Shown one piece after another: positions 41,891 to 58,926 of a stretch of 64,000 nt of DNA. Made by a program: the position numbers and the translations under genes. The stretch lies in IMG/VR virus record IMGVR_UViG_3300022868_000009, positions 280,635-344,634 of that record. One strand, given 5' to 3'. How positions within the stretch are numbered: the stretch's first letter is position 1; each line of letters begins with the position of its first letter. The notes beneath the pieces are model-generated. The model was not told where the DNA came from. It did not search any database and saw only the letters and a list, made by a program, of their open reading frames with translations.

Positions 41891-41906
41891 CAAAATAATT
41901 AAAAAT

Positions 41907-42951: not shown

Positions 42952-42969
42952 ACCTAATAATTCTATAAT

Positions 42970-42998
42970 AAAAAGAGGATTTATTAATCCTCTTTTTT
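42970..42998 (+). terminator. Intrinsic terminator
   Basis: aaaaagaggatt...aatcctcttttt. Confidence 0.85.
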
Positions 42999-43170
42999 AT
43001 TGCGATAAACACTATTTAGATTTAGTCTAAATAAAAATAATAATTCAAATTATTATATTAAGAAGATTATCCCTATATTTAATAAATAAATTAAAAAATT
43101 ATGCAAAAAGTAGAAATAATATTAAGTGTGGTGGATATGGATTGTTTCATTAAAAATAATAATAACAATT

Positions 43171-43803
43171 ATGATTAAAATAGGAGAAAAGAAAATAATA
43201 CATAAAGATTGTATATACTTTGAAAATAGTATATGTTTTGGAGATGGCGATACATATAGTACCGTTAAATATGAAATACCTAACAATGAAGTAGGACACA
43301 ATACAATTTTACTTGCATTATTCTTAGGATATTATGATGAATATTCAGATGGAGGTATAAAAAATCTACCAAATTGGATTCAAGATGAATTAAAAACATT
43401 AGACCTTCTAATTCTAAATAGATGGAATATAAATAAAAAAACAAATGTTAAAGATACAGATGAAAGAGAACTTATGTATATCTTTAATGATTCTGAAGAA
43501 CATTCAGGATATTTTGGTTGGGTTGATGGTACAGATATATATTATTATGATAAAGATGGTGTATCACATGATATTGAAATATTTGGTATATCATTCGATA
43601 AACAAACTAATCATACAGCAATAGATATAATGCTTAATATATATGCATGGTTTCTAAGTAAGTGCAAAGAAATAACAATGGAAAAATTTAAAGACTTAGT
43701 AAGATTTGAATATAGAGTAAAATTCAAGGAAATAATAGAGGACAAACCCGAACTAAAAGACCTTAAAATTAAAATAGAAGCCGCTAACCTTGGCTTATTA
43801 TAA
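43171..43803 (+). CDS. Hypothetical, GDGD...YYYDKDGV family with C-tag (EAANLGLL)
   Basis: Paralog of 22303/26950. Confidence 0.75.
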   Translation: MIKIGEKKIIHKDCIYFENSICFGDGDTYSTVKYEIPNNEVGHNTILLALFLGYYDEYSDGGIKNLPNWIQDELKTLDLLILNRWNINKKTNVKDTDERELMYIFNDSEEHSGYFGWVDGTDIYYYDKDGVSHDIEIFGISFDKQTNHTAIDIMLNIYAWFLSKCKEITMEKFKDLVRFEYRVKFKEIIEDKPELKDLKIKIEAANLGLL

Positions 43804-43854
43804 TATTGGTTTGCCATAACTCCAAGTTATCTGAAAATGTACAATGAGTAGGCA

Positions 43855-43884
43855 CAACCCCACCTTTAAAGGTGGGGTTTTTTT
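43855..43884 (+). terminator. Intrinsic terminator
   Basis: aaccccacctt-ta-aaggtggggtt followed by T-run. Confidence 0.9.
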
Positions 43885-44204
43885 ATTTAGAAGAATTTCC
43901 TTACCTTTATTTAAATTAAAAAGAAAAAATTATGTTAGAATATACAAAAAATGGAGTAATTATAAGTGGTCAATTTCATTCACTTGAGAGCATCATCAGA
44001 AAAGTAAACCAAATGAAGAAATTGATGAACTAACAAAGAAATGGAAAGTATGAAAAAAGAATATGAACATACGAGAAATTAACAAATTTGGACCAACACT
44101 AATTAAATAAAGAAATGTAATTTTTTAATTAAACAAATTTACTATTGTAAAATATAAATCATAATATTTGATATGTTAATCGGTTAAAAAACAAATTAAA
44201 AATT

Positions 44205-44666
44205 ATGATTTTAACAATAATTATTACAACCTTAGCAAGCGTATTATCAACTTTGGTGGTTGGCTATTTTATATGGTCAGGTATTAGGGCACGTAAGTTA
44301 AATCAAAAGGTCAAGGATAATACATTAAGTATTACACAAAATGAAAGATATTGTCAAGATGCAGATGATTCACTTAGTGAATCTATAGATGAAGTGAATA
44401 TTCGTGTTGATAATAATGTAAATGAATTAAGTGAAAGAATTCATTCTATGTATGGTCAGAATTCAGATAATAGAGATGAATTAGATAGAAAAATTCATAA
44501 AGAATTAGATAAAAGATTTGATAAAGTTTGGCAAACAATTCAAAATAATTCTTTATTCCAAAAGTATAATATTATAACTGCGTCGGGAAATATTGATTCA
44601 GATAAAGTTACAAAACTTGCTATTGAGAATGATGGTGAAGCCGTGAAAGATGAAGAAATAAAATAA
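44205..44666 (+). CDS. Membrane-anchored coiled-coil protein
   Basis: N-terminal TM. Confidence 0.75.
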   Translation: MILTIIITTLASVLSTLVVGYFIWSGIRARKLNQKVKDNTLSITQNERYCQDADDSLSESIDEVNIRVDNNVNELSERIHSMYGQNSDNRDELDRKIHKELDKRFDKVWQTIQNNSLFQKYNIITASGNIDSDKVTKLAIENDGEAVKDEEIK

Positions 44667-44735
44667 GAAATATAACTGATTAACAATCAAATATTTTTTA
44701 TATTAGAAGAAAATCCGTATCTTTATACTATTAAA

Positions 44736-44783
44736 AAAGGCTGAGGATTTAAACTTCCCTAGAAGAGTAGACTTCAACATGCA
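44736..44783 (+). ncRNA. Repeated small structured RNA, copy 5
   Basis: aaaggctgaggatttaaacttccctagaagagtagacttcaacatgc after promoter. Confidence 0.55.
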
Positions 44784-45707
44784 AAAAATTCTTATTTAGA
44801 ACCATTTTAAATAAGATCAGAATATTAAGAATTTTATTCTTATTTACACACCCCTTCTTCGATAAACACTAACCAAAATAATTGCTATACAATTTTTATT
44901 TCTTGAAAATTTTCCGTATCCTATTACTATATCAGAATAAAAAATTCTAAGATTGAAATATATCAGAAATTTTCCTATAAGTGAATAACATAAACAGACA
45001 ATTTCAGAATTACAAAAAACCTAGATATAAGACCAAAATTTTCGAATGAGAATTTAATTGAATAATTTTAAAGCCTTGAACGTGAATAACACATATTCAT
45101 TATATGTAAATACGTAAAGATATAAATGCGCTTATTCTTATTTAGACTAAATAAGAATTATAATAATAATTTTTATTATTAATAATAATTACTATTATAA
45201 TGATATATGAGTCTTAATAGTAAATATCCTGAACAATTTCAAGTGCAAATATTTGAATCAAGAGAAGGAGATATAATAACCAACAAAATTAATAATTGGT
45301 TAGATGATAATAAAAGTAAACAAATACACGATATTAAGTACATTGTCGATGGTAATGGTTATATATGGTGCGTAATTGAATTTTATAATGAATAATATAA
45401 ATAAAAATACAACATTTATTAGAAAATCAGGGCTTAGTATCAAGGTTGATGAAGTAGAAGGTGTTAAATGTGTGAAAGATAATCTTGATAAAGGTAATGT
45501 AATATGGTTTCATATGAAAAGTGGAAAAACTTTATGTATTCCACAATTAGAACTAGATATTTTTAAGAAATTAGAAGAATATTTATTAAAATATTTTAAT
45601 GTAACACAAATAAATGATCTATTAGATGAATCTGAATAATAACATACCGAATATTTCGGAATTATGAAAATGTATCAATTAAAACAAGTAAAAGAAAAAT
45701 TAAAATT

Positions 45708-45929
45708 ATGAAATATCTTGATTACAAAGGTTACACAGGTAGTATAGAGTATAGTGAAGAAGATAACTTGCTTTATGGAAAAGTATTAGGAATACAAGGA
45801 CTTATCTCTTATGAAGGACTTACGGGAAAGGATTTAGAAGCAGATTTTAAAGAATCTATTAATGTTTATTTCGCTGATTGTAAAGCAAACAATACAAGCC
45901 CTGAAAAACCATTTAAAGGACGAATATAA
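45708..45929 (+). CDS. hicB: Solo, C-terminally truncated HicB-like antitoxin
   Basis: YKGYTGSIEYSEEDNLLYGKVLGI...ISYEG....L...F..SI..Y...C......PEKPFKG. Confidence 0.8.
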   Translation: MKYLDYKGYTGSIEYSEEDNLLYGKVLGIQGLISYEGLTGKDLEADFKESINVYFADCKANNTSPEKPFKGRI

Positions 45930-46637
45930 AGGACATTTATTTAAAATTTCTGATATTGTATTGATAAAATATACTAATCAGTATGGAACAGTAATCGTAT
46001 TTAAAAATAAATCAACAATAAATACATCTGATGAACGATTATATCAGTATTTTAAAAAAATGTTAAACCCAACAAATATAGAAAATGAACTTAAATAACA
46101 ATGAAGATTTTATCTTATTATGGCATGATAATGGATATACAACAGTTAAAATTGATCAAATATCTTATATGGTTTGGTATTATTATACTACAAGTACAAG
46201 TTATTTAAAGCTTTTTATATATTATATAAATGGAAAATATTCTGAGGTTATAATTTTTAAAAGACATTATGATGTAAATAAACCAAAATTCGAATTAGCT
46301 GGATTAGAAATACCAAGTTATGAAAAAACATCTTAAATATAAGAATAATGTCAATGTAGATGAATTTCAAATTTACCTCCGACCAGGGAGAAAACAAGTT
46401 ATCAGGAAACGGAAACCTTAGATGAATATAGATTAGATAGTAATTTAAAAATTTAAAGATGCAAGAAAAAATTGAAAATAAGACAACTCATAAAGCCATT
46501 GATCTTATTGAACAAGGACATTTACCTATTGATGTTGTTGATACTCTAAAGTTAAAGAAATTATTAGTTATATCTATTGAACTTGAAAGATATAAATGTT
46601 GTCAAATGATAAAAGAAGAACTATTAAATAGAAAAGA

Positions 46638-46967
46638 ATGGGATTAAATTATAAATACCTTAAAGTAAAAGGACAATTAATAATATTAGAAGATATTGTA
46701 AGTGTTACTAAATATATTTGTAATCCTACACTGAAAGCAGCATGGAGTGGATATGTGATGAGAAGATTTAATACTATGGAGGAATTTAAAGAAAGTGATT
46801 ATGCGGATTGTGAAGAAACTGTAATAGGTGTAAAGTATGTTTTATCTGATATTAAGTTAGTTTTTACACTAGAAGAAAAAGAAGATGCAGAGAAATGTTT
46901 TAATTTCTTAAAACAATTAGAAATTACAGATTATATTGAATTAAAAGATATTAAAAATGAGTCTTAA
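46638..46967 (+). CDS. Hypothetical protein
   Basis: One of several coupled small ORFs, 45207-47238. Confidence 0.6.
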   Translation: MGLNYKYLKVKGQLIILEDIVSVTKYICNPTLKAAWSGYVMRRFNTMEEFKESDYADCEETVIGVKYVLSDIKLVFTLEEKEDAEKCFNFLKQLEITDYIELKDIKNES

Positions 46968-48351
46968 CAACAATATTAAATACATAGAAGTTATAACTGG
47001 AACAGAATCTATTTGGATTTGTACTGAAAATATATTACAAGTTAAAAAAGAAACAAAGAACCATTATAATGGACACAATTATGTGAAGTATGCAATATTA
47101 AGAATTGTATATAAAACTAAGAATGTTAAAGTTAAAATCAGAGATATTAATATTTCTAATGAATTAAGAGATAAGTTGTGTATTGTTTTAGAAGAATATG
47201 TACTAAAGAGTGAGTACAAACAAGTAAAATTAAATTAAATGAGCCTGAACAATAATACTAAATGGATATATGCTGATATTTCTGATTATGAAGAGAGAAA
47301 TATATTGAAAATCAACAAAGAAGCGTCTTGTGCTAATAATGGATATAATATATTTTTCAAAATAATATATGTTAAGTAAATACATAACAATTGAGAAAGG
47401 AACAATTAATGAGAGAGAAAAAACGAGAGAAAAATCAACAAAGTCTATCATTTATTGAAAGAATTCGTGATAGAATCCACGGAAATTGACCTCGCAGAAT
47501 GACGCATATCAACGCACATATGTGACAAAAAAGTATTGATTGGGAACCCCTATACACATTTATTCGGATTTTGAACTTTATATGGTTGTTATATTTAGGT
47601 CTTTTGTTTTCTAATTTTACTTACTGTTGATGTGTGATAAAACACATTAAAAGATTAAGAACATTGAATTTTAGATTTGACAATCAAAATTATTATTAAA
47701 TCTCCGAACAACAGAATATGGTAGAGAAAAAATTAAAGGATTTAAAATGAAAAATAATTATATGATTATAGAAACAATATTTGGTGAAATGAAAATTGAA
47801 GAATATAAATATTCTGATTTTGATAAAGAAACTCAGAATTATATTGATAGATTATGGGAAGTTGATATAGATAATTATGATGGTGATGTACTAAAAATTA
47901 TGTCTGATATTGTAATTGTTGCTAAAGATAAATCTGATTATGATCATTATATATTAAATTAAAAATTACCTACAGATGATGAAGAGATTGAATTTTTGAA
48001 AAAATATATTGAAAAAATATATTAATATGAACGAAATAATTGTATTTTTTATCAAACCCATGGTCTTTAACATCGATTGTTTGTATAATCTTGATTGCCA
48101 AATCTAAGATTTAACAATATATTGTTTTCAGTATGTTTAGGAGTACATATTATTAACTGTAAGTATTAATTATAAAGGATTTGAGTATGAAAAAAACAAG
48201 TAAAATGAGGATTGCAATAAAAATAAAATCACCTAAAAAGTTACATGAAGTATGGTCAGAAATGGATGGTAAGATATCCTAATGATAGAGAAACCATTAT
48301 TGTAGATTTGGATAACAATGATTTAGATTCTAATAAATTAGGATTATTATA

Positions 48352-48633
48352 ATGTTGTATTATATAAAAGTAAAGGAAGATATGGATATCAGTCGAATAA
48401 CCGATGTTGTTCCATGGTATAATAATGAGGGTTTAACTTTTGTAAAATTTGTTAATTGTTATTGTATTGGTTTTTATGATTATTATAATTATTTTGATAA
48501 TAATGTATCTAGAAAATTATTTTGGTATTCGTATTTTCATATGAAAAATGTAATAATTGAGAGAAAGAAAAAGTGTAAAGACATTGATGAATTTTTAAGT
48601 TATTACGAAGGATGTAAAATGGGATTGCTGTAA
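48352..48633 (+). CDS. Hypothetical, C-tag (EGCKMGLL)
   Basis: Related to 53201; preceded by orphan tag. Confidence 0.8.
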   Translation: MLYYIKVKEDMDISRITDVVPWYNNEGLTFVKFVNCYCIGFYDYYNYFDNNVSRKLFWYSYFHMKNVIIERKKKCKDIDEFLSYYEGCKMGLL

Positions 48634-48685
48634 ATGGAGGAATTAATTCCACGAACCTATCCAGGAATTAGTTACGTTAGAATTA

Positions 48686-49024
48686 TTGAATATGAAATAT
48701 GCGATAGAAATAAATAATATATCAGAGGGTGCGAAATTATTTGATATTATAGATATAGATTTGGGAAGAATAAAAGGTTTTATAGGTGATAGATATTCTT
48801 CAGATAAGGAGATATGGATAGATTTTTTAAAGTTAAGGATTAATCATTATAATCATTTTAATTCTGTAATAGTTTGTTTTTATGAAGGATTAATTTTTGA
48901 AAAGTATATTTATGGTGGTCATATATTTCACAATGTATTGGGTGATAATTATATAGAATTAAATTGTAATGATATGGATTATATTAAATTATTTTTTGAA
49001 GCTAATAAAATGGGATTGTTATGA
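48686..49024 (+). CDS. Hypothetical, C-tag (EANKMGLL)
   Basis: ORF track. Confidence 0.8.
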   Translation: MNMKYAIEINNISEGAKLFDIIDIDLGRIKGFIGDRYSSDKEIWIDFLKLRINHYNHFNSVIVCFYEGLIFEKYIYGGHIFHNVLGDNYIELNCNDMDYIKLFFEANKMGLL

Positions 49025-49241
49025 TTATGAAAGAAAGTATTGAGTATGATTTTAAATTTGCTATAAAGGTGGATGATAAGTTATTAATTAAATTAGTGGT
49101 AAATCATTTATATATTTTGGGTTATAAGTGGTATGGGGGTGGTGATAGGGATGATATATTAGAGGTATGTATTAAATCTAATTATGATGTCATCCTGAAT
49201 TAATGGAGGATTATGTTAGTATTAAAATGGGATTATTATGA
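49021..49241 (+). pseudogene. Internally deleted C-tag gene
   Basis: 5' part resembles 49238; last ~52 bp identical to 3' end of 49534 gene but out of frame. Confidence 0.75.
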
Positions 49242-49537
49242 AAAAGTTTGAAAACACACAATTTAAATTTGCTATAAAGGTGAGTGGTATAGGATTAACT
49301 GAGTTAGTGGTAAATCATTTATATTCTTTGGGTTATGAGTGGTGTGGTGGTGATAAGTGTGAGGTAATAAATGAATGTGCAAAAAATAATGAACATGGAA
49401 TTGGTGTTGAACATGGTAGGATAAGTTATAATGTTTATGAATGGGATTGTGATAAGTGGTATGATATTGATGAATATGTTGAAAAATATGATGAATTAAT
49501 GGAAGAATATATTAGTATTAAAATGGGATTATTATGA
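49238..49537 (+). CDS. Hypothetical, C-tag (ISIKMGLL)
   Basis: Tandem paralog. Confidence 0.8.
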   Translation: MKKFENTQFKFAIKVSGIGLTELVVNHLYSLGYEWCGGDKCEVINECAKNNEHGIGVEHGRISYNVYEWDCDKWYDIDEYVEKYDELMEEYISIKMGLL

Positions 49538-49833
49538 AAGTTAAAAAGTGTGATTATAAATTTGCTGTAGAGGTAAGTGGTGTATTATTAACTGAGTTAT
49601 TAGTAGAACATTTATATTCTTTGGGTTATGAATGGTTTAGTGGTAAGAAAATGAATATAAATGCTCTATGTGAAAGAACAGAATCAAATAAAATTGGTAT
49701 TGATTATAATGGTAAGATAAGTTATAATGTTCACGAAGAGATATGTGATGAGTGGTATGATATTGATGAATATATTGAATGTCATCCTGAATTAATGGAG
49801 GATTATGTTAGTATTAAAATGGGATTATTATAA
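49534..49833 (+). CDS. Hypothetical, C-tag (VSIKMGLL)
   Basis: Tandem paralog. Confidence 0.8.
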   Translation: MKVKKCDYKFAVEVSGVLLTELLVEHLYSLGYEWFSGKKMNINALCERTESNKIGIDYNGKISYNVHEEICDEWYDIDEYIECHPELMEDYVSIKMGLL

Positions 49834-50357
49834 TGATTATAGATAGTCAGGAAGTATTAAACAGATTTATAAAGTTTTTAGAAGAAGATCATCTTGAAGG
49901 TTATATAAAAATTGTAGAAAAATTGAGAGATAAGTTAATTAGATATTGATTTGTTGATGAAATATTGTAGTGATTCTTATGGTAATAATTTTTCTTATGG
50001 TGATGATTATTTTTTAGGTATAACTGAGGAAGGTGAAGCCTTATTAAAAAAAGATAGTAGAATTCATGATGAGATTTTAGGAATTGTGGAAGAAGATGAA
50101 ATTAAATTGATTTTTGTATATTTTAATAAGGGTTCAATTATAAAATATAGTTATCTTGAAGTTTTTAATTATGGGGAGTATAAGAAGCATTTTTTAAGGA
50201 ATCAGAGAAAGTTAAAGTTAGAGAGGGTTAATGGAAAATAAGTGGAGGAATTCCACGAACCTATCCAGGAATTAATTACGTTAGAATTATTGAAAATTTA
50301 TATAAATGTGATTTAAGTAATATAAAGAAGATATGCATTAAATTAAATGATAGTAAT

Positions 50358-50558
50358 ATGCATGAAGTTATGAATTATTTAGGTTATTCAGCTAACATGT
50401 GTTATTATAATTATGGTTATGTGATATATTATATTGGTTTTGGTGTGTATAGATTTTGTGAAAATAATAGGTTTACTGAATTAATAAATGATTGTGAAGA
50501 ATGTAATTTTGAAGAGTTTAAATTTAGTATAGAGTCAAATAAGATGGGATTGTTATAA
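50358..50558 (+). CDS. Hypothetical (possibly 5'-truncated), C-tag (ESNKMGLL)
   Basis: ORF track. Confidence 0.6.
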   Translation: MHEVMNYLGYSANMCYYNYGYVIYYIGFGVYRFCENNRFTELINDCEECNFEEFKFSIESNKMGLL

Positions 50559-50679
50559 AAAATAAATAATGTTAATAGTAATTTTACATAAAAACGAAGA
50601 GGAAAAGAAATTATAGATTTTTGGAAAGAAAATTTTTATTTTGAAAGTTAATGTAGTGATTATATAAAATAGAGATATT

Positions 50680-50943
50680 ATGAAAAAATATTATATAAAA
50701 TTAGACTATAATAGAGATGAAATTTTTGATTATTGTATGCCTTATTTCAAGGAGGATATTATTAGTGATATTAAGATTAAAAATGATTTATTTGTATATT
50801 TAATATATTATACTCATACTGCGAATTACAATTTTTATACAAGTTTTTCTAATAAATTATTATTAGGAAGGGATTATATAATGTGTGATAATCTTGAAGA
50901 GTTTAAATTTAGTATAGAATCTAGTAGAATGGGATTGATATAG
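50680..50943 (+). CDS. Hypothetical, C-tag (ESSRMGLI)
   Basis: Shares EEFKFSIES with 50358. Confidence 0.75.
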   Translation: MKKYYIKLDYNRDEIFDYCMPYFKEDIISDIKIKNDLFVYLIYYTHTANYNFYTSFSNKLLLGRDYIMCDNLEEFKFSIESSRMGLI

Positions 50944-51001
50944 ACATATTTTTTAAATTAAAAGAAGTTTCGTATATTATGTTAAATTAAAAAAGGAAAA
51001 A

Positions 51002-51382
51002 ATGAAATTACAATGGATAAATATATTTATAAAGTATGATGATTTTACTTGGAAGATTTATGATGAAGTTGAGTTTTATTTTAAATCTAAATATCCTGGT
51101 ATTAAATGTGTAGGTAAAAAAGAATTAAAATATGCATTAAAAGATAGATTAGAAGAAAATCATTATTTTCTAGATATTTTTGCTTTTTGTGTAGAATTTT
51201 ATCCTAAAAGAGATAGATTTACAGTATATACACCAATTGGAAAAAATTTTGCTGATTATGGTTTATGTTATAATAAATATACTGAAAGTGTTACTTATTA
51301 TGAATTAACTGTTGATTATGGTGAAAATTTTAAAGAAGAAATTGAAATGTTATTAACATCAATGAATATGGGGGTTCTTTAA
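51002..51382 (+). CDS. Hypothetical, C-tag (SMNMGVL)
   Basis: ORF track. Confidence 0.8.
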   Translation: MKLQWINIFIKYDDFTWKIYDEVEFYFKSKYPGIKCVGKKELKYALKDRLEENHYFLDIFAFCVEFYPKRDRFTVYTPIGKNFADYGLCYNKYTESVTYYELTVDYGENFKEEIEMLLTSMNMGVL

Positions 51383-51753
51383 TGAAAAAATGGTTAAACA
51401 TAAAAATTGACATAAATGGTGATATCATGGGCCAAATGGTTAAGATGATAAATAAAATGAAAAATTTTTATAGTCCAACTTTATCATTTGATAAACATTT
51501 AGAAGAATTGTCAGAATCTATAAAAACTATAAAAGAAAACAGAAGTTTAAAAGATGATAATTTATTTATAAGTTTCTTTTTAGAAAATAATAAGGACTTG
51601 AATTTACATGAATCAAGTTTAATGGTTGTAGATTTATGGAGTGATGATAGATGGAGGGATATCACAAATGAGATATGGATTGAGGATACTAATGTTTTTT
51701 TGGAATATGGTTTAGATGCATTATTAGATAGTATAAATATGGGGTTACTTTAG
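51382..51753 (+). CDS. Hypothetical, C-tag (DSINMGLL)
   Basis: ORF track. Confidence 0.8.
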   Translation: MKKWLNIKIDINGDIMGQMVKMINKMKNFYSPTLSFDKHLEELSESIKTIKENRSLKDDNLFISFFLENNKDLNLHESSLMVVDLWSDDRWRDITNEIWIEDTNVFLEYGLDALLDSINMGLL

Positions 51754-51755
51754 AT

Positions 51756-52081
51756 ATGGAATTAGATTATATAAATATACTTATAAAGTATGATGATTTT
51801 ACTTGGGAGATTTATGATGAAGTGGAGTCTTATTTTTTATCGAAATACCCTGATTTAAAATTAGAAGTATTTTTGCTTTTTGTTTAGAAATTCGCCCTGA
51901 TAATATTAGGAATGTATTTAGAATATACACACCACAAACAATAAATTATGCTAAACATGGTTTAAGTTGCAATTCTTATAATGAAGATATTACTTATTAT
52001 GAATTAACTGTTGATTATGGTGAAAATTTTAAAGAAGAAATTGAAATGTTATTAATATCAATGAAATTAGGTTTATTATAA
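51756..52081 (+). pseudogene. Decayed paralog of 51002 gene, ends SMKLGLL
   Basis: About 65 bp identical to 51291-51356; 5' similarity; internal deletion/frameshift. Confidence 0.75.
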
Positions 52082-52483
52082 ATTAAAAATTAGGTTGGAG
52101 GAGGCATTTAGAAGGTTCAGAGAAGCTGTTAGACTAAATTTAAAAAAAAGATAATAAAATTAATCGTCTAAAAAATTTAAAGTTATAAAATCATGAATAA
52201 GTATTGTTACATAGAAAGAAATAACATTGGAGTAATTCAGAAATATACTAAACCAAGTTGGTTTAGAAAGACTTTCTTTAATGACGGATATGAATGGAGA
52301 GACTTTTGTTTATGTACCGATAAAGAATGGACGAAAGACTTTTACGAAAGATCATATAAAGATATTAAAATTTAAAAATCATCGAATCTATTATTGAGCC
52401 TGAAAAAATGAATCTTTTATAATAGATTGTCTAAGAATTTGTTGTAACAAATAATTAAAAAAAATGAAAATAATAAAAAAAAT

Positions 52484-52807
52484 ATGAATTATAGAAAATT
52501 TGTGCAAGAACGAATTGGTATTTTTATAGTCTTTACACAAGAAGATTATAATGAAGTTGTTAAAATCTTTGAATCTATTGGATTAACATTTAATCCATTT
52601 TCTAACTTATCATTTAATAGAGTATTTTGTATTACTTTACAAATAAATCCATGGGGTGGTAACAGAGTTTTCAGGGATTCTTATTCATATAGATCATATT
52701 ATGAAAGAGAAAAAGAATATTCCAAATTTTGGGATGTAGATAAATTAAGAGAAGAGAGTAAAGATTTACCAATAAAATATGAAGCAAGAAAGATGGGTTT
52801 ATTATAA
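52484..52807 (+). CDS. Hypothetical, C-tag (EARKMGLL)
   Basis: Tail-to-tail TTATAA overlap with 52802 gene. Confidence 0.8.
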   Translation: MNYRKFVQERIGIFIVFTQEDYNEVVKIFESIGLTFNPFSNLSFNRVFCITLQINPWGGNRVFRDSYSYRSYYEREKEYSKFWDVDKLREESKDLPIKYEARKMGLL

Positions 52808-53146
52808 TAGACCCATTTTGTTTCCTGTGTGATATATTTTGAATTCTTTATTATAATCAGCATATTCTTCTAGGCTTTCAAATACTGTAAAAAATGTATT
52901 AGAAGAATAATTAAATGCGATGAGGGTTTTATTATAACCAATATAATATTCATTGTAACTATAATTGTTAATGCAATGTTCTAATATTTCTTTGTGATGG
53001 GCTTCATCTTCATTGGGTTCATCCCAGTATTTATTCAATTGACTTCTCCAATAATTAATAAGGCTTGTTACTTCTTCCGGAGTTTTGCAGTTAACTAGGA
53101 CTTTATCTGATTGTATATTTTCTAAATATGTACTAAGGTATTTCAT
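52802..53146 (-). CDS. Hypothetical, N-tag (MKYLSTYLE) + C-tag (GNKMGLL)
   Basis: Both motifs; AATATATA upstream. Confidence 0.8.
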   Translation of the reverse strand: MKYLSTYLENIQSDKVLVNCKTPEEVTSLINYWRSQLNKYWDEPNEDEAHHKEILEHCINNYSYNEYYIGYNKTLIAFNYSSNTFFTVFESLEEYADYNKEFKIYHTGNKMGLL

Positions 53147-53200
53147 ATGAAGATATATATTGAATTTGTTTTTTCAAAATAAATTTTGTATTTTATATTT

Positions 53201-53482
53201 ATGAAATTTTATTATTTAGAAGTAAAAGAAAAGGATTGGAATGAAGTTATAAACTATATAACTAAAGTTATTCCTATTTGGAATGAAAAGTTTGATATAA
53301 GTCTTCCTATTAAACATATTGGATTTTATATAGATCTAAAGAATGAATTTGGTTTAAATAATGATAATTTATTATTGTTTCGTTATCATAAATTAAATTT
53401 TAAAACTTGTGATTATATAAAGTGTAAGGATATAGAAGAATTCTTATTTTCTTATGAATCAAGTAAGATGGGATTATTGTAA
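53201..53482 (+). CDS. Hypothetical, C-tag (ESSKMGLL)
   Basis: ORF track, start corrected. Confidence 0.8.
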   Translation: MKFYYLEVKEKDWNEVINYITKVIPIWNEKFDISLPIKHIGFYIDLKNEFGLNNDNLLLFRYHKLNFKTCDYIKCKDIEEFLFSYESSKMGLL

Positions 53483-53503
53483 CATTATTAAATAAAACAA
53501 AGA

Positions 53504-53827
53504 ATGAACATAGCTATCGAGTTATATACTAAGAAAGAGTTATTTAAGGCATGGAAAAAGATGTTAGATTTAGGATATAATTTAGATGTTTGGCATAGAA
53601 TTTACATGGAGAAGGATTATAATTGGATTGGATTTGATTATATAAAAAAAAGGGGTGGTCTTTATATTTATTTTGATTTAGATGAATATATAATGACTGG
53701 TTGGGATGGTTTATATAATATACACATGATTAAATATATTCCTGATGATATGGATTTTATTATCAATCATATTGATATTGATTCGATTGATTCGTGTATA
53801 GAGGGTATTAAATTAGGTTTATTATAG
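53504..53827 (+). CDS. Hypothetical, C-tag (EGIKLGLL)
   Basis: Paralog of 54920/41187. Confidence 0.8.
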   Translation: MNIAIELYTKKELFKAWKKMLDLGYNLDVWHRIYMEKDYNWIGFDYIKKRGGLYIYFDLDEYIMTGWDGLYNIHMIKYIPDDMDFIINHIDIDSIDSCIEGIKLGLL

Positions 53828-53876
53828 ATTTGAAATTATGAGATTTTATAGGATCTACTAAAATGGGATTAATGTA

Positions 53877-54176
53877 ATGAATGAACTTGTATATATTAGT
53901 GTAAATAATAAGGAACAATATGATAGAGTTATACGTATTGCTGAAAATAATGGTTTTAAAACAAGAGGTAATTCCTCTTCTTTACCTGTTAATATTTATC
54001 TTTGTATTAAGGATGCTGTTGAAGGATCTTGGTTAAAGGATGTTATTTATTTTAGTAGTAATGATTATGATCTATATAAAACTGTATTACCAGTTAGGAT
54101 AAAATGTGATTATGAGGATTTTTCAGAAGAATATTTAAAGTTTATAACAGAATCAGATAAGATGGGATTATTATAA
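53877..54176 (+). CDS. Hypothetical, C-tag (ESDKMGLL)
   Basis: ORF track. Confidence 0.8.
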   Translation: MNELVYISVNNKEQYDRVIRIAENNGFKTRGNSSSLPVNIYLCIKDAVEGSWLKDVIYFSSNDYDLYKTVLPVRIKCDYEDFSEEYLKFITESDKMGLL

Positions 54177-54178
54177 TT

Positions 54179-54590
54179 ATGAATGAATCGAATACAATAT
54201 TGTGTGCTGCTTTTTGTGGTACTGGAAAAACTTATATTTGCAATCAGAATAAGAAGGCTATTAAAATTGAATATTGGAAGTATGAAAGAAGGACTAGAAA
54301 AAGAATATGTTAGTGATATAAAAAAGCAAATTGGAAAAGTAGATTATATTTTTTTAAGTACTGACATAGAAGGTTTGAAACTATTAAAAGGTTTTAATAT
54401 TGTACTTGATTACCCTGAAAATAATTTGAGAAATGAATACCTTGATAGGTTTATTGATAGAGATAGTCCTTACGATTTTATAGGGACGTTTATGAAACAT
54501 TGGAATATATGGATAGATGAACTTAAAGATCAAAATTATTGTAAACATATTATATTGAAAAATGGTGAGTACTTGCAAAATATTCTCTAA
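54179..54590 (+). pseudogene. Frameshifted P-loop kinase-like gene
   Basis: Frame from ATG 54179 reads MNESNTILCAAFCGTGKTYIC; the remainder is in the 54183 frame after ~54285. Confidence 0.7.
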
Positions 54591-54620
54591 ATTAAAGACT
54601 ATGTTTTAAATTAAATAACA

Positions 54621-54923
54621 ATGAATGATATAGATATAAATGTAAATGAAGATAATTATATAGAATTTGTCAATTATTTATATAGTATTAATTATATAAC
54701 TAAGAATGATAATGAAAGGTTAGTTAATTGGTATACTGATGTGAATGATTATTTTCAAAAAGAATATAACTCATATGAATATAGATTATTTTTTGATCGT
54801 AAAGAATGGGATATAATAGCTTGTTGTTGTGGCGGTTCTGAATTTTTTAAAAAAGTAACTTTTATTAATAATTTAAAGGAATTAGAGGTTTATATGAATT
54901 GTTTAAAAATGGGGCTATTATGA
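54621..54923 (+). CDS. Hypothetical, C-tag (NCLKMGLL)
   Basis: ORF track. Confidence 0.8.
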   Translation: MNDIDINVNEDNYIEFVNYLYSINYITKNDNERLVNWYTDVNDYFQKEYNSYEYRLFFDRKEWDIIACCCGGSEFFKKVTFINNLKELEVYMNCLKMGLL

Positions 54924-55240
54924 AAAGAATTGCAATAGAGATATATTCCATAGAGAAATTATTTGAAATATGGGAAGAAATGGTTGATTTAGGTTACACT
55001 TTAAGTTCTTGGACTAATATATTTAAGAGAACAGAAATTGATTGGCTTGGTTTTTTAAGTATTGAAAGAGGTGGTATTTATCTTTGTTTTGATTTAGATA
55101 AGTGTATAATGATTGGTTGGGGAAGTCTATATTATGATTCTGGAAAAAAGTTTATTATTAAAGATTTTGAATTAATTATAGATAGTAGTAAAGATGATAT
55201 TAGATTTCATCTAAATTCAATTAAGATGGGGTTATTATAA
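54920..55240 (+). CDS. Hypothetical, C-tag (NSIKMGLL)
   Basis: ATGA overlap at 5' end, TTATAA overlap at 3' end. Confidence 0.8.
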   Translation: MKRIAIEIYSIEKLFEIWEEMVDLGYTLSSWTNIFKRTEIDWLGFLSIERGGIYLCFDLDKCIMIGWGSLYYDSGKKFIIKDFELIIDSSKDDIRFHLNSIKMGLL

Positions 55241-55603
55241 TAGTCCGAGTTTATTTCCTTGTATCAATATATCAAGATCCATTCCATATTCTTTTTTTAA
55301 CCAATCATCACAACTTATAAAAGAATCTTTATAAAATGACACATATTCTAATAGAAACTTCATTGAGCTCCAACACTTATCAAAGCGTTGACCATCATCT
55401 AATGTAAAAAATGTTTTATCTTTTGAAAAAGCAACCCAAAAATTTTCTTTAAAATTTACTCTAGAATATTCTATATCATATTTTTCCTCAATTAATTTTA
55501 TTATAAATTTTGTTTCTTTATGAGGTATATCAGTTATTACAACAATATTATCCTCTTTATTTTCATTGTATGTATTAAGATATTTCATTTTCAAATGTTT
55601 CAA
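55235..55603 (-). CDS. Hypothetical, doubled N-tag (KHLK-MKYLNTYNE) + C-tag (QGNKLGLL)
   Basis: Both motifs; core related to 61463/61750 (ITDIP). Confidence 0.8.
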   Translation of the reverse strand: MKHLKMKYLNTYNENKEDNIVVITDIPHKETKFIIKLIEEKYDIEYSRVNFKENFWVAFSKDKTFFTLDDGQRFDKCWSSMKFLLEYVSFYKDSFISCDDWLKKEYGMDLDILIQGNKLGLL

Positions 55604-56217: not shown

Positions 56218-56697
56218 TTAATATAATCCCATTTTATTTGCATTATAAAGGTCTGGATTTTCTTTCCAAAACCATTCCCAATATTCTTCTAAATTATTAT
56301 AAGGTAATTGGTTATTATAACAATTTAAATATTCTAATCTTTTAGATAATTCAGGTAATTCAGTTAATTGGTTACCATCACAATCTAAATATTTTAACTC
56401 TTTTGGTAATTCAGGCAATTTAGTTAATTTATTATTATAACAATATAATATTTCTAACCCTTTTGGTAGTTCAGGTAATTCAATTAATTTGTTGTTGTCA
56501 CAATATAACATTTCTAATCCTTTTGGTAATTCAGGTAATTCAGTTAATTGATTATTATAACACATTAATTTTTCTAACCCTTTAGGTAATTCAGGTAATT
56601 CAGTTAAATTTAAATTAACTAAATTTAATATTTTACCATCATCACTTAGATGATCTTTTATTAATTGGTTTTCTGAATATGTTTTTAAATATTTCAT
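56218..56697 (-). CDS. Leucine-rich-repeat protein (20-aa LPELPKGLE.L.C.NN.L repeats) with N-tag and C-tag
   Basis: About 5 LPX-type repeats; MKYLKTYSE...ANKMGLY. Confidence 0.9.
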   Translation of the reverse strand: MKYLKTYSENQLIKDHLSDDGKILNLVNLNLTELPELPKGLEKLMCYNNQLTELPELPKGLEMLYCDNNKLIELPELPKGLEILYCYNNKLTKLPELPKELKYLDCDGNQLTELPELSKRLEYLNCYNNQLPYNNLEEYWEWFWKENPDLYNANKMGLY

Positions 56698-56718
56698 CTA
56701 TTTTATAATTTTATTGAC

Positions 56719-57102
56719 TTACATAAGTCCTAATTTACCTGATTCAAATACATATGGGTTATTATGAAAGAATATTTTCATAATAAATAATATTAGTTCA
56801 TAATCTTTTATTATTTGGTGTCCATCATTTTTATTTGAAGATTCTTTTATCCAATTTGGATCTGATACAACTGCAACTTGCTGTTCAACTTTTTGTAATA
56901 TTATTTGAAATAGATTTCCTTCTCGTTTTAACACAATAGTTGTGTATACTCCGTTATAATCTATTTCAAGGAATCCATTTCTAATATAAATTTTAAATTT
57001 GGTATCTTTAAACATATCTTTTATTGTATCAACAAAGAAATCTTGATTGTTATCATTAACTGAAATCTCATTTATCATTTGATATGTCTTTAAATGTTTC
57101 AT
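56719..57102 (-). CDS. Hypothetical, N-tag (MKHLKTYQMINE) + C-tag (ESGKLGLM)
   Basis: Both motifs. Confidence 0.8.
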   Translation of the reverse strand: MKHLKTYQMINEISVNDNNQDFFVDTIKDMFKDTKFKIYIRNGFLEIDYNGVYTTIVLKREGNLFQIILQKVEQQVAVVSDPNWIKESSNKNDGHQIIKDYELILFIMKIFFHNNPYVFESGKLGLM

Positions 57103-57123
57103 CTATTTTATAATTTTATTGAC

Positions 57124-57492
57124 TTACAAGACACCAAGATTTTTTGTCCCATTATACATATTTATCATATTTTGTAATTCATTCATAAATTCATCTTTAG
57201 TTATTAATATATCTGAGTGTTTATAATAACCGCAAGGACCATAAATACGATTTAATTTATAATGAATTGTTCTACTTTCATGTTGTACACAGCAACTATA
57301 CACCATTTTTCTTTTATCTTCCTCTTTTTCAAGTATATCACAACATAATTCTATTTTTGTTCTATGTACATCAAATTTAAAATCATTTATAAGTTTATCA
57401 TATATTTCAATTGCTTCTTTTGCGTTATTAAATTCAACTGATATAAACTTATCTTCATCTATATTTTCATTATATGTTTTAAGGTATTTCAT
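57124..57492 (-). CDS. Hypothetical, N-tag (MKYLKTYNE) + C-tag (TKNLGVL)
   Basis: Both motifs. Confidence 0.8.
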   Translation of the reverse strand: MKYLKTYNENIDEDKFISVEFNNAKEAIEIYDKLINDFKFDVHRTKIELCCDILEKEEDKRKMVYSCCVQHESRTIHYKLNRIYGPCGYYKHSDILITKDEFMNELQNMINMYNGTKNLGVL

Positions 57493-57962
57493 TATAATAA
57501 TCCTAGTTTATTTGCTTCTAAATCTGCTTTAAGGTCTTCACTTTTAAGGTATTCTAATATTTGTGAAAGTTTTTTATAATTTTTTAAATTTTTACTAACC
57601 CTTGTTAAAAGACTAAATTTATCTCTATTATTATCTTCAATAAGATAAGCAATAACATCAACAATTTTACTAGTATTAATATCAACTGAATCTAATACTT
57701 CTAGATGTGTATAATTACCTAATTTAATATTTTCTGGTATTTTTATAAATACTTGTTCATATTTATCACCATGTAAAATATATTGATATTTATTATATAT
57801 TTTAGCACATTCCTTTTTAATATCTGATATTAGTTTATTAAAATTATCAAAAATTGTTTTATCATTTATTTGTTTATAAAGCAATTCTTTTTGTTTATAA
57901 AATGATTCTTGTTGTTTATAGTTTTCTTCTATGTTTTCGTTATATGTTTCACTTATGATCAT
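57492..57962 (-). CDS. Hypothetical, degenerate N-tag (ETYNE) + C-tag (EANKLGLL)
   Basis: ORF track. Confidence 0.75.
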   Translation of the reverse strand: MIISETYNENIEENYKQQESFYKQKELLYKQINDKTIFDNFNKLISDIKKECAKIYNKYQYILHGDKYEQVFIKIPENIKLGNYTHLEVLDSVDINTSKIVDVIAYLIEDNNRDKFSLLTRVSKNLKNYKKLSQILEYLKSEDLKADLEANKLGLL

Positions 57963-58082
57963 ATTGTTTTGTTTGTTTTATATATTAATTTGTTTTTTTA
58001 GAATTTTTTTCTTATATTACAATAATTATTAAAAATTATGAAAGAATTAATTTGGTTAAATATATGTTATAAAGGTCTTATG

Positions 58083-58325
58083 TCAAAAGAAATGTATTTC
58101 TACATATTCATCTATGATGATTGGATGATATCTTTTAATATCTCTCACTATATCATCTACAATTTCTTTTAGTTTTATTATATCTGTATTTGGTGGAACA
58201 AATAAGTAAATTTCTGAATCATCTTTACACAAACCCTTTTTATTCAAATAATATGGTGTATTTTTAAATATATCATCAATAATATATTTAAATTTAAATG
58301 ATTCATACTTTTTTATATATTTCAT
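58083..58325 (-). CDS. Hypothetical, N-tag only (MKYIKKYES)
   Basis: ORF track. Confidence 0.7.
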   Translation of the reverse strand: MKYIKKYESFKFKYIIDDIFKNTPYYLNKKGLCKDDSEIYLFVPPNTDIIKLKEIVDDIVRDIKRYHPIIIDEYVEIHFF

Positions 58326-58335
58326 AATTATTAGA

Positions 58336-58746
58336 TTATAAAAGACCCATTTGACCTGTTATTAATAATCTTTTTACTTTTTTTAATGGTACTAAATAAT
58401 TTTCCCAGTTTTCTGGACTATCATCTATACCATCTGTTATATCTTTATCTTCCCAAACAGATATTGGTATTTTATTATCCTTTGTAAAGATAGTGTTTGC
58501 ACCATTTTGATCAAATCGTATAATCTCTTCATCAAATAAATTAAAAATTGTTCGACTTGTTTTTATATTATCATCAATATATGAATTATAGTCAGTAATT
58601 AAATGTTTTGCATATTGATTAAACCATTTACAACCATTCTTTATAGCTAAATTAGTATAAGTAAAATATTCATCAATATTACTTACTTCAAACACAAATA
58701 ATACATTTGGTATTGTACTTTCATTATATGTTTTTAAATATTTCAT
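58336..58746 (-). CDS. Hypothetical, N-tag + C-tag (TGQMGLL)
   Basis: Both motifs. Confidence 0.8.
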   Translation of the reverse strand: MKYLKTYNESTIPNVLFVFEVSNIDEYFTYTNLAIKNGCKWFNQYAKHLITDYNSYIDDNIKTSRTIFNLFDEEIIRFDQNGANTIFTKDNKIPISVWEDKDITDGIDDSPENWENYLVPLKKVKRLLITGQMGLL

Positions 58747-58926
58747 TATAGTTTATATATTTATTTTTTTATTTAAGAAAATTTTAACTATTTTTTTAAT
58801 ACCTTTAGTTTTAACTATTGGTATATTTTTAAAATAATTATTTAATTCATCAACCATTTTAATTCTTAACTTAGATGTAATGGTCATAGACTTAGCAAAT
58901 TGATTATATGTGTCTAATTTATTCAT

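What the first reader, a model, noticed from the sequence alone, without database searches (positions are those of the whole stretch)
56218..56697. Double-tagged LPX-type leucine-rich-repeat protein in a phage
Seen: about five near-perfect 20-aa repeats of the type found in the LRR domains of IpaH/SspH/YopM effectors, flanked only by the N-tag and C-tag. It is the only double-tagged protein with a recognisable fold, and that fold is a pure binding scaffold. Inference: tagged proteins may be adaptors in which the variable core binds a target and the C-tag recruits a common machine such as a protease.
Basis: partly seen in the sequence, partly recalled or inferred. Interest (0 to 1): 0.62.

Follow-up and report, generated by a model that had tools for sequence, protein, structure and literature searches.

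The report
Double-tagged LRR binder of a megaphage
A giant bacteriophage encodes a small protein-binding scaffold of the kind Shigella, Salmonella and Yersinia inject into our cells, carrying two short address labels that it shares with dozens of unrelated phage proteins; the front label resembles the signal phage T4 uses to load proteins into its head.

Summary
Window 56218-56697 (- strand) is an intact 159-aa gene with five full 20-aa LPX-type leucine-rich repeats. Its best sequence and fold matches are the LRR domains of SspH, IpaH and YopM. It has no ligase domain. Both tags are real and selected as peptides. In the 344.6-kb contig about 65 ORFs end in Phi-E-[ASG]-x-K-[ML]-G-L-L and 31 begin MK[YH]LKT[YF], on mostly unrelated cores.

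The repeats are 72% identical, not near-perfect. Conserved 20-aa caps lie between repeats and tags. The contig holds at least four LRR paralogues.

The phage is a relative of the 735-kb "Mahaphage" and probably infects Bacteroidota. It has a T4-type head: a gp23-like capsid protein and a gp21-like protease fused to a scaffold of eleven SEYIAE repeats.

My reading:
- The N-tag is probably a T4-type capsid-targeting leader, so the LRR protein would be packaged and ejected into the next host.
- The C-tag is a separate, strictly C-terminal motif, mostly on genes in an early-looking block. Its partner is unknown.

All function is inferred.

The parts
56218..56697 (-). Whole gene: 159-aa double-tagged LPX-type LRR protein (stop codon TAA at 56218-56220).
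56668..56697 (-). N-tag, residues 1-10, MKYLKTYSEN. This is the leader shared by 31 ORFs of the contig. It ends in Y-S-E, a Phi-x-E motif.
   Evidence: The first 10 residues of the model have pLDDT about 60.
56608..56667 (-). Residues 11-30: the rest of the N-terminal cap helix plus a degenerate first LRR strand (GKILNLVNLN). It aligns to the N-cap of YopM and SspH2.
56308..56607 (-). Five full 20-aa LPX repeats (residues 31-130), consensus LTELPELPKGLExLxCxNNx. The variable positions 13, 15 and 17 fall in the predicted beta strand, which in known LRR structures lines the concave face.
56248..56307 (-). Residues 131-150, LPYNNLEEYWEWFWKENPDL: a Trp-rich helical C-cap conserved across the phage LRR family.
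56221..56247 (-). C-tag, residues 151-159, YNANKMGLY. This is the family variant of the contig-wide tag Phi-E-[ASG]-x-K-[ML]-G-L-L-COOH. The last four residues are coil in the model.
56698..56718 (-). 21-nt spacer GTCAATAAAATTATAAAATAG between the stop of the upstream tagged gene and the ATG. An identical spacer precedes the next gene at 57103-57123.
56719..58746 (-). Five upstream same-strand tagged genes: 58336-58746 (both tags), 58083-58325 (N-tag only), 57492-57962 (C-tag, degenerate N-tag), 57124-57492 (both) and 56719-57102 (both). The LRR gene appears to be co-transcribed with them, because the gaps are no more than about 120 nt.
58753..58760 (-). ATATATAA promoter-like motif about 7 nt upstream of the first gene of that cluster. 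The same motif class precedes the major capsid gene. Coordinates are approximate.
55235..55588 (-). The next double-tagged gene downstream on the same strand (117 aa), with its own ATATATAA-type motif.
22222..54966 (+). Plus-strand block of 72 small genes that holds 34 of the 47 C-tag-only genes and none of the N-tag genes. Upstream regions carry TAnnTTTG in 19 of 44 cases and never ATATATA[AG].

Best explanation
The gene encodes a small stand-alone LPX-type leucine-rich-repeat binder. It belongs to a multi-copy family with variable repeat number in a Bacteroidota-type megaphage with a T4-like head.

Shown:
- The fold.
- The absence of any enzymatic domain.
- Sequence variation concentrated at repeat positions 13, 15 and 17, which fall in the predicted beta strand; in known LRR structures these positions line the concave, ligand-binding face.
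- Relatives with 2 to 9 repeats.
- Two terminal tags that are shared with dozens of unrelated proteins and conserved at the peptide level.

Inferred:
(1) The N-tag, M-KYL-KT[YF]-x-E-[FN], is the counterpart of the T4 capsid-targeting sequence, M-KTYQEF-IAE. The protein would be made with the capsid-class genes, bound to the prohead core, perhaps trimmed after the Phi-x-E, kept in the head and ejected with the DNA into the next host cell.
(2) In that cell the concave LRR face would bind a host protein, for example a defence or housekeeping factor. It would act as an injected inhibitor or decoy, as T4 IPI* does.
(3) The C-tag is a second, independent short linear motif needing a free C-terminus. 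The LRR protein shares it with the phage's early-region proteins, so it most likely acts in the host cytoplasm, as a handle for one common partner or as a degron. The partner is not identified. A Clp machine encoded by the same lineage is the only candidate in sight.
For: LRR identity.

Binder-type variation: entropy is 2.6-3.4 bits at repeat positions 13, 15 and 17, against about 0 at the L/P/C/N framework positions. Homologues of 99-240 aa have 2-9 repeats and the same caps and tags.

Tags on unrelated cores, under peptide-level selection.

T4-type head:
- A gp23-family capsid protein, 4.7e-25.
- An 811-aa ORF with a weak gp21/S77 protease domain followed by 11 tandem 14-aa SEYIAE repeats. 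These repeat the T4 L/I-X-E cleavage motif and the EFIAE end of the T4 CTS (PMC9026906; bioRxiv 10.1101/2021.01.19.427310).

N-tag against the T4 CTS:
- K, T, Y, E and F are shared in order, at the extreme N-terminus.
- T4 targeting depends on CTS residues 4 and 7, which correspond to the invariant [YF] at position 7 and to position 10, where F is the joint commonest residue (7 of 31), in the N-tag.
- 26 of 30 N-tags have E at position 8 or 9. Phi-x-E lies within residues 5-20 in 23 of 30, against 186 of 451 other ORFs.
- Two double-tagged genes lie close downstream of the capsid gene on the same strand, after an intervening 550-aa ORF.
- ATATATA[AG] lies upstream of 9 of 12 N-tag genes that have an intergenic region, and upstream of the capsid gene. 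It lies upstream of only 3 of 27 C-only genes (p = 0.0002).
- Three of five large IMG/VR contigs carrying the N-tag have a gp23-type capsid gene.
- T4 Alt loses propeptides at both ends, which is a precedent for double tagging (PMC5694885).

C-tag in an early-looking block: TAnnTTTG precedes 19 of 44 genes there against 21 of 204 elsewhere (p = 1e-6). 34 of 47 C-only genes lie there.
Against: - No experiment or read data bears on packaging, cleavage, ejection or binding.
- The N-tag/CTS resemblance is a six-residue motif. Most N-tags lack the IAE processing half.
- ATATATA[AG] also precedes topoisomerase and homing-endonuclease genes, so it is not a clean late or structural marker.
- The promoter classes are motif inferences only.
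- The closest complete relative (LR756501; capsid protein 64% identical) lacks the C-tag, so the tags are not part of the conserved head machinery.
- The target of the LRR face is unknown.
- The C-tag partner is unknown. The LRR family carries N or A at position -8, where half of the other tags have E.
Confidence: 0.45

Rival explanations
1. The LRR core binds a host target, and the C-tag recruits a common proteolytic machine that destroys the bound target. This would be an adaptor that delivers its cargo in trans.
For: The C-tag is strictly C-terminal and apolar (41 terminal against 3 internal occurrences), and its last four residues are coil in the models. Established knowledge, from my own recall and not checked with a tool here: apolar C-terminal tails such as ssrA are recognised by ClpXP, ClpAP and FtsH; SspB tethers cargo through a C-terminal peptide; IpaH proteins pair the same LRR type with a ligase that sends targets to degradation. 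A contig of the same tag-bearing lineage encodes ClpC without an N-domain but with a GIGF ClpP-docking loop, plus a full ClpP 13 kb away.
Against: Nothing links the tag to Clp. ClpP also occurs in N-tag phages without this C-tag. No protease partner lies in the window's own contig. It is not proven that the ClpC/ClpP contig belongs to the same genome. An adaptor would itself need to escape degradation.
Confidence: 0.18
2. The C-tag is a cis-acting degron. It gives early-acting phage proteins, including injected ones, a short programmed lifetime, and it has no role in delivering targets.
For: The motif features are the same as above. 34 of 47 C-only genes lie in a block with host-like promoters, as expected of early genes that must be cleared later. 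The lineage encodes ClpC (no N-domain) and ClpP.
Against: The conserved nine-residue motif, with near-invariant G at -3 and K at -5, is more specific than a generic apolar tail. The timing is inferred from motifs only. No stability data exist.
Confidence: 0.2
3. Both tags are prohead-core targeting propeptides, as at the two ends of T4 Alt. All of the roughly 80 tagged proteins would be capsid cargo, and the C-tag would be cut off at Phi-Phi-E / [ASG].
For: T4 Alt loses 6 N-terminal and 63 C-terminal residues at ITE and LTE (PMC5694885). About half of the C-tags have E at -8, followed by A, S or G and preceded by hydrophobic residues. The scaffold carries SEYIAE repeats. Another lineage has at least 17 consecutive genes that carry both tags.
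Against: E at -8 is present in only 34 of 65 tags and is absent from the LRR family. The C-only genes sit in an early-looking block that never carries the capsid-class motif.
Confidence: 0.13
4. The tags have no peptide function. They are conserved DNA ends of gene cassettes that recombine, or they are translational-coupling signals.
For: An identical 21-nt spacer lies between cassettes. An extended leader (MINEISVN) is shared by LRR and non-LRR genes. 20 of 62 C-tag genes overlap the next start by 1 or 4 nt.
Against: Synonymous codons vary freely within the tags: Gly is GGA/GGT/GGG/GGC, Leu is TTA/TTG/CTN. Other lineages keep the tags in altered peptide form, such as K[FY]N[IL] and DLGLW. Two thirds of C-tag genes are not coupled to a downstream gene, the LRR gene among them.
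Confidence: 0.05
5. The C-tag is a sliding-clamp-binding tail, since it resembles QL[SDG]L[FL] as in the QLGLF at the Pol II C-terminus.
For: The resemblance is Phi-G-L-[LF]-COOH, and a few tags read QMGLL or QLGLL. The phage has a gp44-type clamp loader.
Against: Position 1 is K in 48 of 65 tags and Q in only 4. No beta or gp45 clamp was detected in the contig. The ORFs next to the clamp loader gave no clamp match.
Confidence: 0.03

Closest known systems
LRR domains of the type III effectors IpaH (Shigella), SspH1/SspH2/SlrP (Salmonella) and YopM (Yersinia)
   Same: The same 20-residue LPX repeat (LxxLPxLPxxLxxLxCxxNxL). They are the best sequence hits and the best fold hits, at 38-48% identity. 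There is an N-terminal helical cap. The role is a pure binding scaffold, delivered (here presumably) into another cell.
   Different: The protein is only 159 aa. It has no NEL ligase domain and no type III secretion context. It has its own Trp-rich C-cap. It is encoded by a phage and bracketed by phage-specific tags. Any target would be bacterial, not eukaryotic.
T4 internal proteins IPI/IPII/IPIII and Alt, which carry the capsid-targeting sequence MKTYQEFIAE
   Same: A short leader of about 10 aa at the extreme N-terminus of otherwise unrelated small proteins. The genome has gp23-type capsid and gp21-type protease genes. The residues K-T-Y-x-E-F are shared. The loci are hypervariable and cassette-like. 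Alt is processed at both ends.
   Different: The leader is longer at the front (MKYL-) and lacks the IAE processing half. There are far more tagged genes (31 or more per half genome). A second, C-terminal tag has no T4 counterpart. Packaging is not shown.
C-terminal recognition tails: the ssrA tag, the SspB XB peptide, and encapsulin cargo-loading peptides (Phi-G-S-L). These comparisons rest on my own knowledge, not on a tool result.
   Same: A short motif at the extreme C-terminus, apolar at the end, placed on unrelated proteins to address them to one machine or shell.
   Different: The sequence (K-[ML]-G-L-L) matches none of them. No partner has been identified. It is encoded in the genes rather than added by tmRNA.

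Membership tests
Bacterial LPX-type (20-residue) LRR domain (YopM/IpaH/SspH type) | Tandem 20-aa repeats with the consensus LxxLPxLPxxLxxLxCxxNxL | tested here: met
   TRF finds period 60 nt, 5.1 copies. The repeat logo has invariant L1, P5, C16 and N19.
Bacterial LPX-type (20-residue) LRR domain (YopM/IpaH/SspH type) | Significant sequence and fold similarity to solved LPX LRR domains | tested here: met
   SspH2 2e-66, YopM 7e-63. Foldseek: SspH1/IpaH/YopM, TMq 0.65-0.75.
IpaH/SspH NEL E3 ubiquitin ligases | C-terminal NEL domain with a catalytic cysteine | tested here: not met
   The protein ends 29 residues after the last repeat. Pfam finds only LRR families. The PDB alignments cover only the LRR parts of SspH2 and the IpaHs.
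Type III secreted effectors | An N-terminal secretion signal and a type III secretion system in the same organism | tested here: not met
   The gene lies in a phage genome with a gp23 capsid, baseplate and clamp-loader genes. Its N-terminus is the phage-wide N-tag.
T4-type CTS-bearing internal (ejected) head proteins | A conserved leader of about 10 aa at the extreme N-terminus of otherwise unrelated proteins | tested here: met
   31 ORFs carry it; their cores fall into separate BLAST clusters.
T4-type CTS-bearing internal (ejected) head proteins | Leader similar to MKTYQEFIAE and ending in an L/I-X-E protease site | tested here: inconclusive
   KTY-x-E-[FN] is shared. [YF]-x-E lies at positions 7-9 in 14 of 30 leaders and Phi-x-E within residues 5-20 in 23 of 30. 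The IAE half is missing.
T4-type CTS-bearing internal (ejected) head proteins | gp23-type capsid protein and gp21-type prohead protease/scaffold in the same genome | tested here: met
   PF07068 4.7e-25. PF03420 scores 22-24 bits, below the cut-off, within an 811-aa ORF that also carries 11 SEYIAE repeats.
T4-type CTS-bearing internal (ejected) head proteins | Physical presence in virions and ejection into the host | not testable with these tools
   The phage is uncultured and no proteome exists. The complex prediction gave no answer.
C-terminal degron or protease-adaptor tails (ssrA-like, SspB-like) | A motif that must sit at the free C-terminus, with an apolar end | tested here: met
   41 terminal against 3 internal occurrences. 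The last four residues are [ML]-G-[LIV]-[LIMFY].
C-terminal degron or protease-adaptor tails (ssrA-like, SspB-like) | A cognate unfoldase or protease that recognises the tail; tag-dependent degradation | not testable with these tools
   The only candidates are ClpC (no N-domain) plus ClpP on the probable sister contig G007. There is none in the window's contig.
Beta-clamp binding motif | Q at position 1 of Q-L-[SD]-L-F | tested here: not met
   K in 48 of 65 tags, Q in 4 of 65.

The most novel reading that the evidence does not exclude
This megaphage lineage runs a tagged effector system. An N-terminal leader routes a subset of small proteins through the capsid into the next host. A universal C-terminal handle, K-[ML]-G-L-L-COOH, couples about 65 diverse early-acting binders, including the diversifying LPX-LRR family, to one machine, plausibly the phage's own ClpC (no N-domain)-ClpP. 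The LRR proteins would then work as injected, programmable degraders of host proteins, a phage analogue of the IpaH LRR-plus-ligase design.
Probability: 0.12. Interest if true: 0.88.

Novelty: new variant of a known kind. Interest (0 to 1): 0.62.

Why it matters
Megaphage genomes are mostly unannotated small ORFs. A two-tag grammar that marks about 80 of them in half a genome would sort that dark matter into candidate delivery and action classes without knowing any fold. If the N-tag is a capsid-targeting leader, megaphages would inject dozens of different proteins, far beyond the T4 paradigm. The leader could also serve as a cargo-loading tool for Bacteroidota phages. The LRR family would be a natural library of small, repeat-variable binders aimed at bacterial proteins. 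The C-tag would point to an unknown hub that a phage addresses with many effectors at once.

Tried and rejected
- Complex prediction. I paired the protease-plus-repeat part of the 811-aa head protein (aa 1-470) with the LRR protein. The tool returned no answer, and this counts neither for nor against binding.
- tblastn of the LRR protein against GenBank phages found no match, possibly because of the low-complexity filter.
- Literature searches for the tag strings, for CTS-like leaders and for megaphage LRR proteins found no description of these tags.
- Family searches of the window's contig found no beta clamp, gp45 clamp, ClpP, S41 peptidase or PDZ domain.
- The two ORFs upstream of the clamp loader, tested as possible clamps, gave nothing by PDB or PHROG search.
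- ATATATA[AG] as a clean late promoter: rejected. It also precedes topoisomerase II and homing-endonuclease genes. I use it only as the class that includes the capsid gene.
- ClpP as a marker of C-tag phages: rejected. ClpP is present in two N-tag contigs that lack the C-tag.
- The N-tag DNA pattern in 596 Gb of bacterial genomes gave 8 stretches. At least one (a 51,205-bp contig, the same length as an IMG/VR contig that carries the N-tag) looks like a phage contig binned into a MAG. This gave no host information.
- The AF2 model of a C-only paralogue family had low confidence (pLDDT 62.6). I use it only for the helix-plus-free-tail pattern.
- Not used: the read tools and the large representative protein search. 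No alternative genetic code was applied, although two CUA-anticodon tRNAs were seen.

Full report
**1. What is at the coordinates**

Window 56218-56697 is a complete ORF on the minus strand: 159 aa, ATG to TAA.

- Its DNA holds a 60-nt tandem repeat, 5.1 copies, at 56305-56607.
- Pfam scores LRR_4 at 8e-17 and LRR_1 at 1e-7, and nothing else of note.
- Against all PDB chains the best matches are SspH2 (2e-66), YopM (7e-63, 1.4e-62), SspH1, IpaH7.8, IpaH3, IpaH1.4/2.5, SlrP and IpaH9.8. Generic LRR proteins follow far behind.
- An AlphaFold2 model built on 24 family members has mean pLDDT 94.3. It shows a helix at residues 2-16, six short strands exactly 20 residues apart (23-25 to 123-125), two C-terminal helices (136-146 and 148-155), and a four-residue coil tail.
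- Foldseek against the PDB returns the SspH1, IpaH9.8, IpaH7.8, IpaH1.4, SspH2 and YopM LRR domains first, with TMq 0.65-0.75 and 38-48% identity.

Three details need correcting.

- The five full repeats (residues 31-130) are on average 72% identical in protein and 81% in DNA. They are regular, not near-perfect.
- The repeats are not flanked only by tags. Residues 11-30 align with the N-cap of YopM and SspH2. Residues 131-150 (LPYNNLEEYWEWFWKENPDL) are a family-specific cap conserved in all relatives.
- The contig holds further paralogues. These lie at G000 97218-97820 (200 aa, 7 repeats, both tags) and at 20714-21250 (6 repeats, with ATT where the others have ATG). A copy at 9-236 is cut by the contig end.

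**2. The family**

The word-index protein search found 229 relatives.

- The closest ones, 99-240 aa, share the whole architecture: N-tag, helix, 2 to 9 LPX repeats, Trp-rich cap and C-tag.
- The C-tag takes different forms by lineage: ANKMGL[YI], AKDLGLW, AKQMGLY or K[YF]N[LI].
- An identical copy and three paralogues lie on a 348-kb IMG/VR contig, which is the same phage shifted by about 85 kb.
- Across 94 repeat units the framework positions are nearly invariant. Positions 13, 15 and 17, which fall in the predicted beta strand, carry 2.6-3.4 bits of entropy. In known LRR structures these positions line the concave face. This is the pattern of a diversifying binding surface.
- Longer untagged relatives occur in giant-virus bins and in Pacmanvirus.

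**3. The tags are real and are peptides**

The window is the last 64 kb of a 344,634-bp viral contig with 25% GC. CheckV estimates it at 48% complete.

- About 65 ORFs end in the logo Phi(-9)-E(-8)-[ASG](-7)-x-K(-5)-[ML]-G-L-L. 31 ORFs begin M-[KR]-[YH]-L-K-T-[YF]-[EN]-E. About 16 ORFs have both.
- The core [KQR][ML]G[LI][LI] is terminal 41 times and internal 3 times.
- Synonymous codons vary freely inside both tags.
- With the tags removed, 80 tagged ORFs fall into 62 BLAST clusters.
- None of 16 other double-tagged (or near-double-tagged) proteins, and none of the larger C-tagged ones, has a significant Pfam family.
- Only a third of C-tag genes overlap the next gene. The tag is therefore not just a coupling signal.
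- An extended leader, MK[YH]LKTY[NQ](R)MINEISVN, is shared by LRR paralogues and by non-LRR proteins. An identical 21-nt spacer precedes two adjacent cassettes. The modules are therefore shuffled.

**4. What kind of phage**

- The contig encodes a gp23-family major capsid protein. It is 64% identical to that of the 735-kb LR756501 phage, about 50% to the 630-640-kb relatives, 29% to the Lak phages, and 24-31% to Chryseobacterium and Tenacibaculum jumbo phages.
- Shine-Dalgarno-like motifs are rare, in 21 of 248 upstream regions. TAnnTTTG, which I recall as the Bacteroidota -7 promoter element, is enriched upstream of genes. A Bacteroidota host is therefore likely.
- Next to the capsid gene lies an 811-aa ORF. 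Its N-terminus matches the T4 gp21 prohead protease family weakly, at 22-24 bits, which is below the curated cut-off.
- The middle of that ORF consists of eleven 14-aa repeats, [ST]EYIAE.[LV]D[KN]NI.Y. T4 gp21 cuts after L/I-X-E, and the T4 capsid-targeting sequence is MKTYQEFIAE. The repeat therefore looks like a scaffold with one T4-type cleavage site per unit.
- Two double-tagged genes lie close downstream of the capsid gene on the same strand, after an intervening 550-aa ORF.

**5. The N-tag**

- Aligned to the T4 CTS, K-T-[YF]-x-E-[FN] matches K-T-Y-Q-E-F.
- In T4, residues 4 and 7 carry targeting and residues 8 and 10 carry processing. The N-tag keeps the first half and lacks IAE.
- 26 of 30 N-tags have E at position 8 or 9. 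Phi-x-E lies within residues 5-20 in 23 of 30, against 186 of 451 other ORFs.
- The extended leader variant contains I-N-E and V-N-E.
- Upstream regions fall into two classes. ATATATA[AG] occurs before the capsid gene and in 95 of 204 regions outside the small-gene block. It occurs before 9 of 12 N-tag genes that have an intergenic region, but before only 3 of 27 C-only genes (p = 0.0002).
- That motif also precedes topoisomerase and homing-endonuclease genes. It therefore marks the phage's own promoter class rather than late genes alone.
- The strict N-tag DNA pattern occurs in 49 stretches on about 30 IMG/VR contigs, but in only 8 stretches in 596 Gb of bacterial genomes.
- Three of five large N-tag contigs have a gp23-type capsid gene.
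- Another lineage has at least 17 consecutive genes of the form MKYIKxFE...KFNI.
- I take the N-tag to be a CTS-type leader, with probability about 0.55. This rests on resemblance and context only.

**6. The C-tag**

- 34 of the 47 C-only genes lie in one plus-strand block (window about 22.2-55 kb). That block has no N-tag gene on the same strand, carries TAnnTTTG upstream in 19 of 44 cases (against 21 of 204 elsewhere, p = 1e-6), and never carries ATATATA[AG] (p = 4e-11).
- The block looks like an early, host-transcribed region. Its proteins could hardly be loaded into proheads. The C-tag therefore most likely acts in the cytoplasm.
- Double-tagged proteins, if injected, would carry the tag there at time zero.
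- In both models the tag is the end of a helix plus a free four-residue tail (the second model is low-confidence).
- The strict C-tag is confined to this lineage: 59 pattern matches in the 348-kb contig and 10 in contig G007, against 0-1 in ten other contigs and in the complete LR756501.

**7. Candidate machines**

- The window's contig has a ClpB homologue without an N-domain (8e-246 to T. thermophilus ClpB) and without a ClpP-docking loop.
- Contig G007 is 166.6 kb with 25.5% GC, and carries 31 C-tags and 21 N-tags.
  - Its gene content is complementary to the window's contig, with only paralogue-level hits. It may be part of the missing half.
  - It encodes a ClpC homologue without an N-domain, in which GIGF aligns to the ClpC VGF loop (9e-235).
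  - It also encodes a full ClpP 13 kb away (1e-63).
However, ClpP also occurs in two N-tag contigs that lack the C-tag, and nothing ties the tag to Clp.

**8. Verdict**

The LRR-as-binder and shared-handle logic is sound. The protease link is untested.

Most likely, the gene encodes a packaged and injected LPX-type binder of a T4-headed megaphage. Its N-tag is the loading signal. Its C-tag is a shared cytoplasmic handle or degron whose partner is unknown.

The finding is a new variant of known kinds (CTS-tagged internal proteins and LPX LRR binders) rather than a new category. The scale of the tagging and the unexplained C-tag make it worth bench work.

Noticed in passing
G000 112614-112688 (+) and 140629-140701 (+), outside the window; window 33091-41891 for the tRNA cluster: ARAGORN finds 35 tRNA genes in the contig and no tmRNA. 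Two have a CUA anticodon (amber-suppressor type). Nine tRNAs lie inside the window. This hints at possible TAG recoding in part of the infection cycle. No alternative code was applied here, and the LRR gene ends in TAA.
   Followed up: no
G000 5467-7902 (-) = L042:5467-7902: An 811-aa head protein joins a weak gp21/S77-type protease domain to eleven tandem 14-aa SEYIAE repeats (42-nt DNA repeat). Each repeat carries a T4-type I-A-E cleavage motif. It looks like a protease-scaffold fusion.
   Followed up: partly
G000 151411-153567 (+); contig G007 (IMGVR_UViG_3300022890_000011) 113199-115205 and 128107-128766: The lineage encodes a ClpB and a ClpC homologue, both without the N-domain, and a full-length ClpP. 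The ClpC homologue has GIGF at the ClpP-docking loop. ClpP lies next to a TnpB/IS605-type gene.
   Followed up: partly
G000 20714-21250 (+): A third LRR paralogue (6 repeats) has ATT where its relatives have ATG. Its start overlaps the C-tag (YKLNI-stop) of the upstream gene. Whether it is translated is unknown.
   Followed up: no
window 22222-54966 (+) versus the rest of the contig: Two mutually exclusive upstream motif classes exist. TAnnTTTG (Bacteroidota-like) is concentrated in the small-gene block. ATATATA[AG] is found everywhere else, including before the capsid gene. Shine-Dalgarno-like motifs occur in only 8% of upstream regions.
   Followed up: partly
window 62362-63189 (+): A 275-aa ORF matches only the catalytic domain of class I Glu/Gln-tRNA synthetases (PF00749, 8.5e-47) and ends in NNGLL. 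It is a truncated synthetase-like gene of unknown role.
   Followed up: no
window 28696-29010, 36566-37000, 42643-42951 (+): Three paralogous ORFs end in TAEERxELG[IL]. Two of them (36566-37000 and 42643-42951) overlap antisense ORFs that begin MLIDSPVLGFLPF. This is a dispersed repeat of unknown nature among the tRNA genes.
   Followed up: no
L022 (IMGVR_UViG_3300030339_000011), locus positions 2985-9887: Another low-GC phage lineage has an uninterrupted array of at least 17 genes. Most start MKYIKxFE and end KFNI, and many have ...HPE[VI]... before the tail. It is a sister version of the two-tag system, and it includes an LRR member.
   Followed up: partly
G000 1788-3440, 8010-9752, 95580-97226, 130817-132418: Several homing-endonuclease-like genes of about 550 aa are scattered through the contig (PHROG 3339/559 for 95580-97226 and 130817-132418; DUF7487 for 1788-3440). 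One sits between the capsid gene and the double-tagged genes.
   Followed up: no
window end (64000) and L002 5378-6544: The contig ends 140 nt before a TnpB/IS605-type gene seen in the sister contig. The last 130 nt match contig G007 at 99%. A repeated mobile element probably caused the assembly break.
   Followed up: partly
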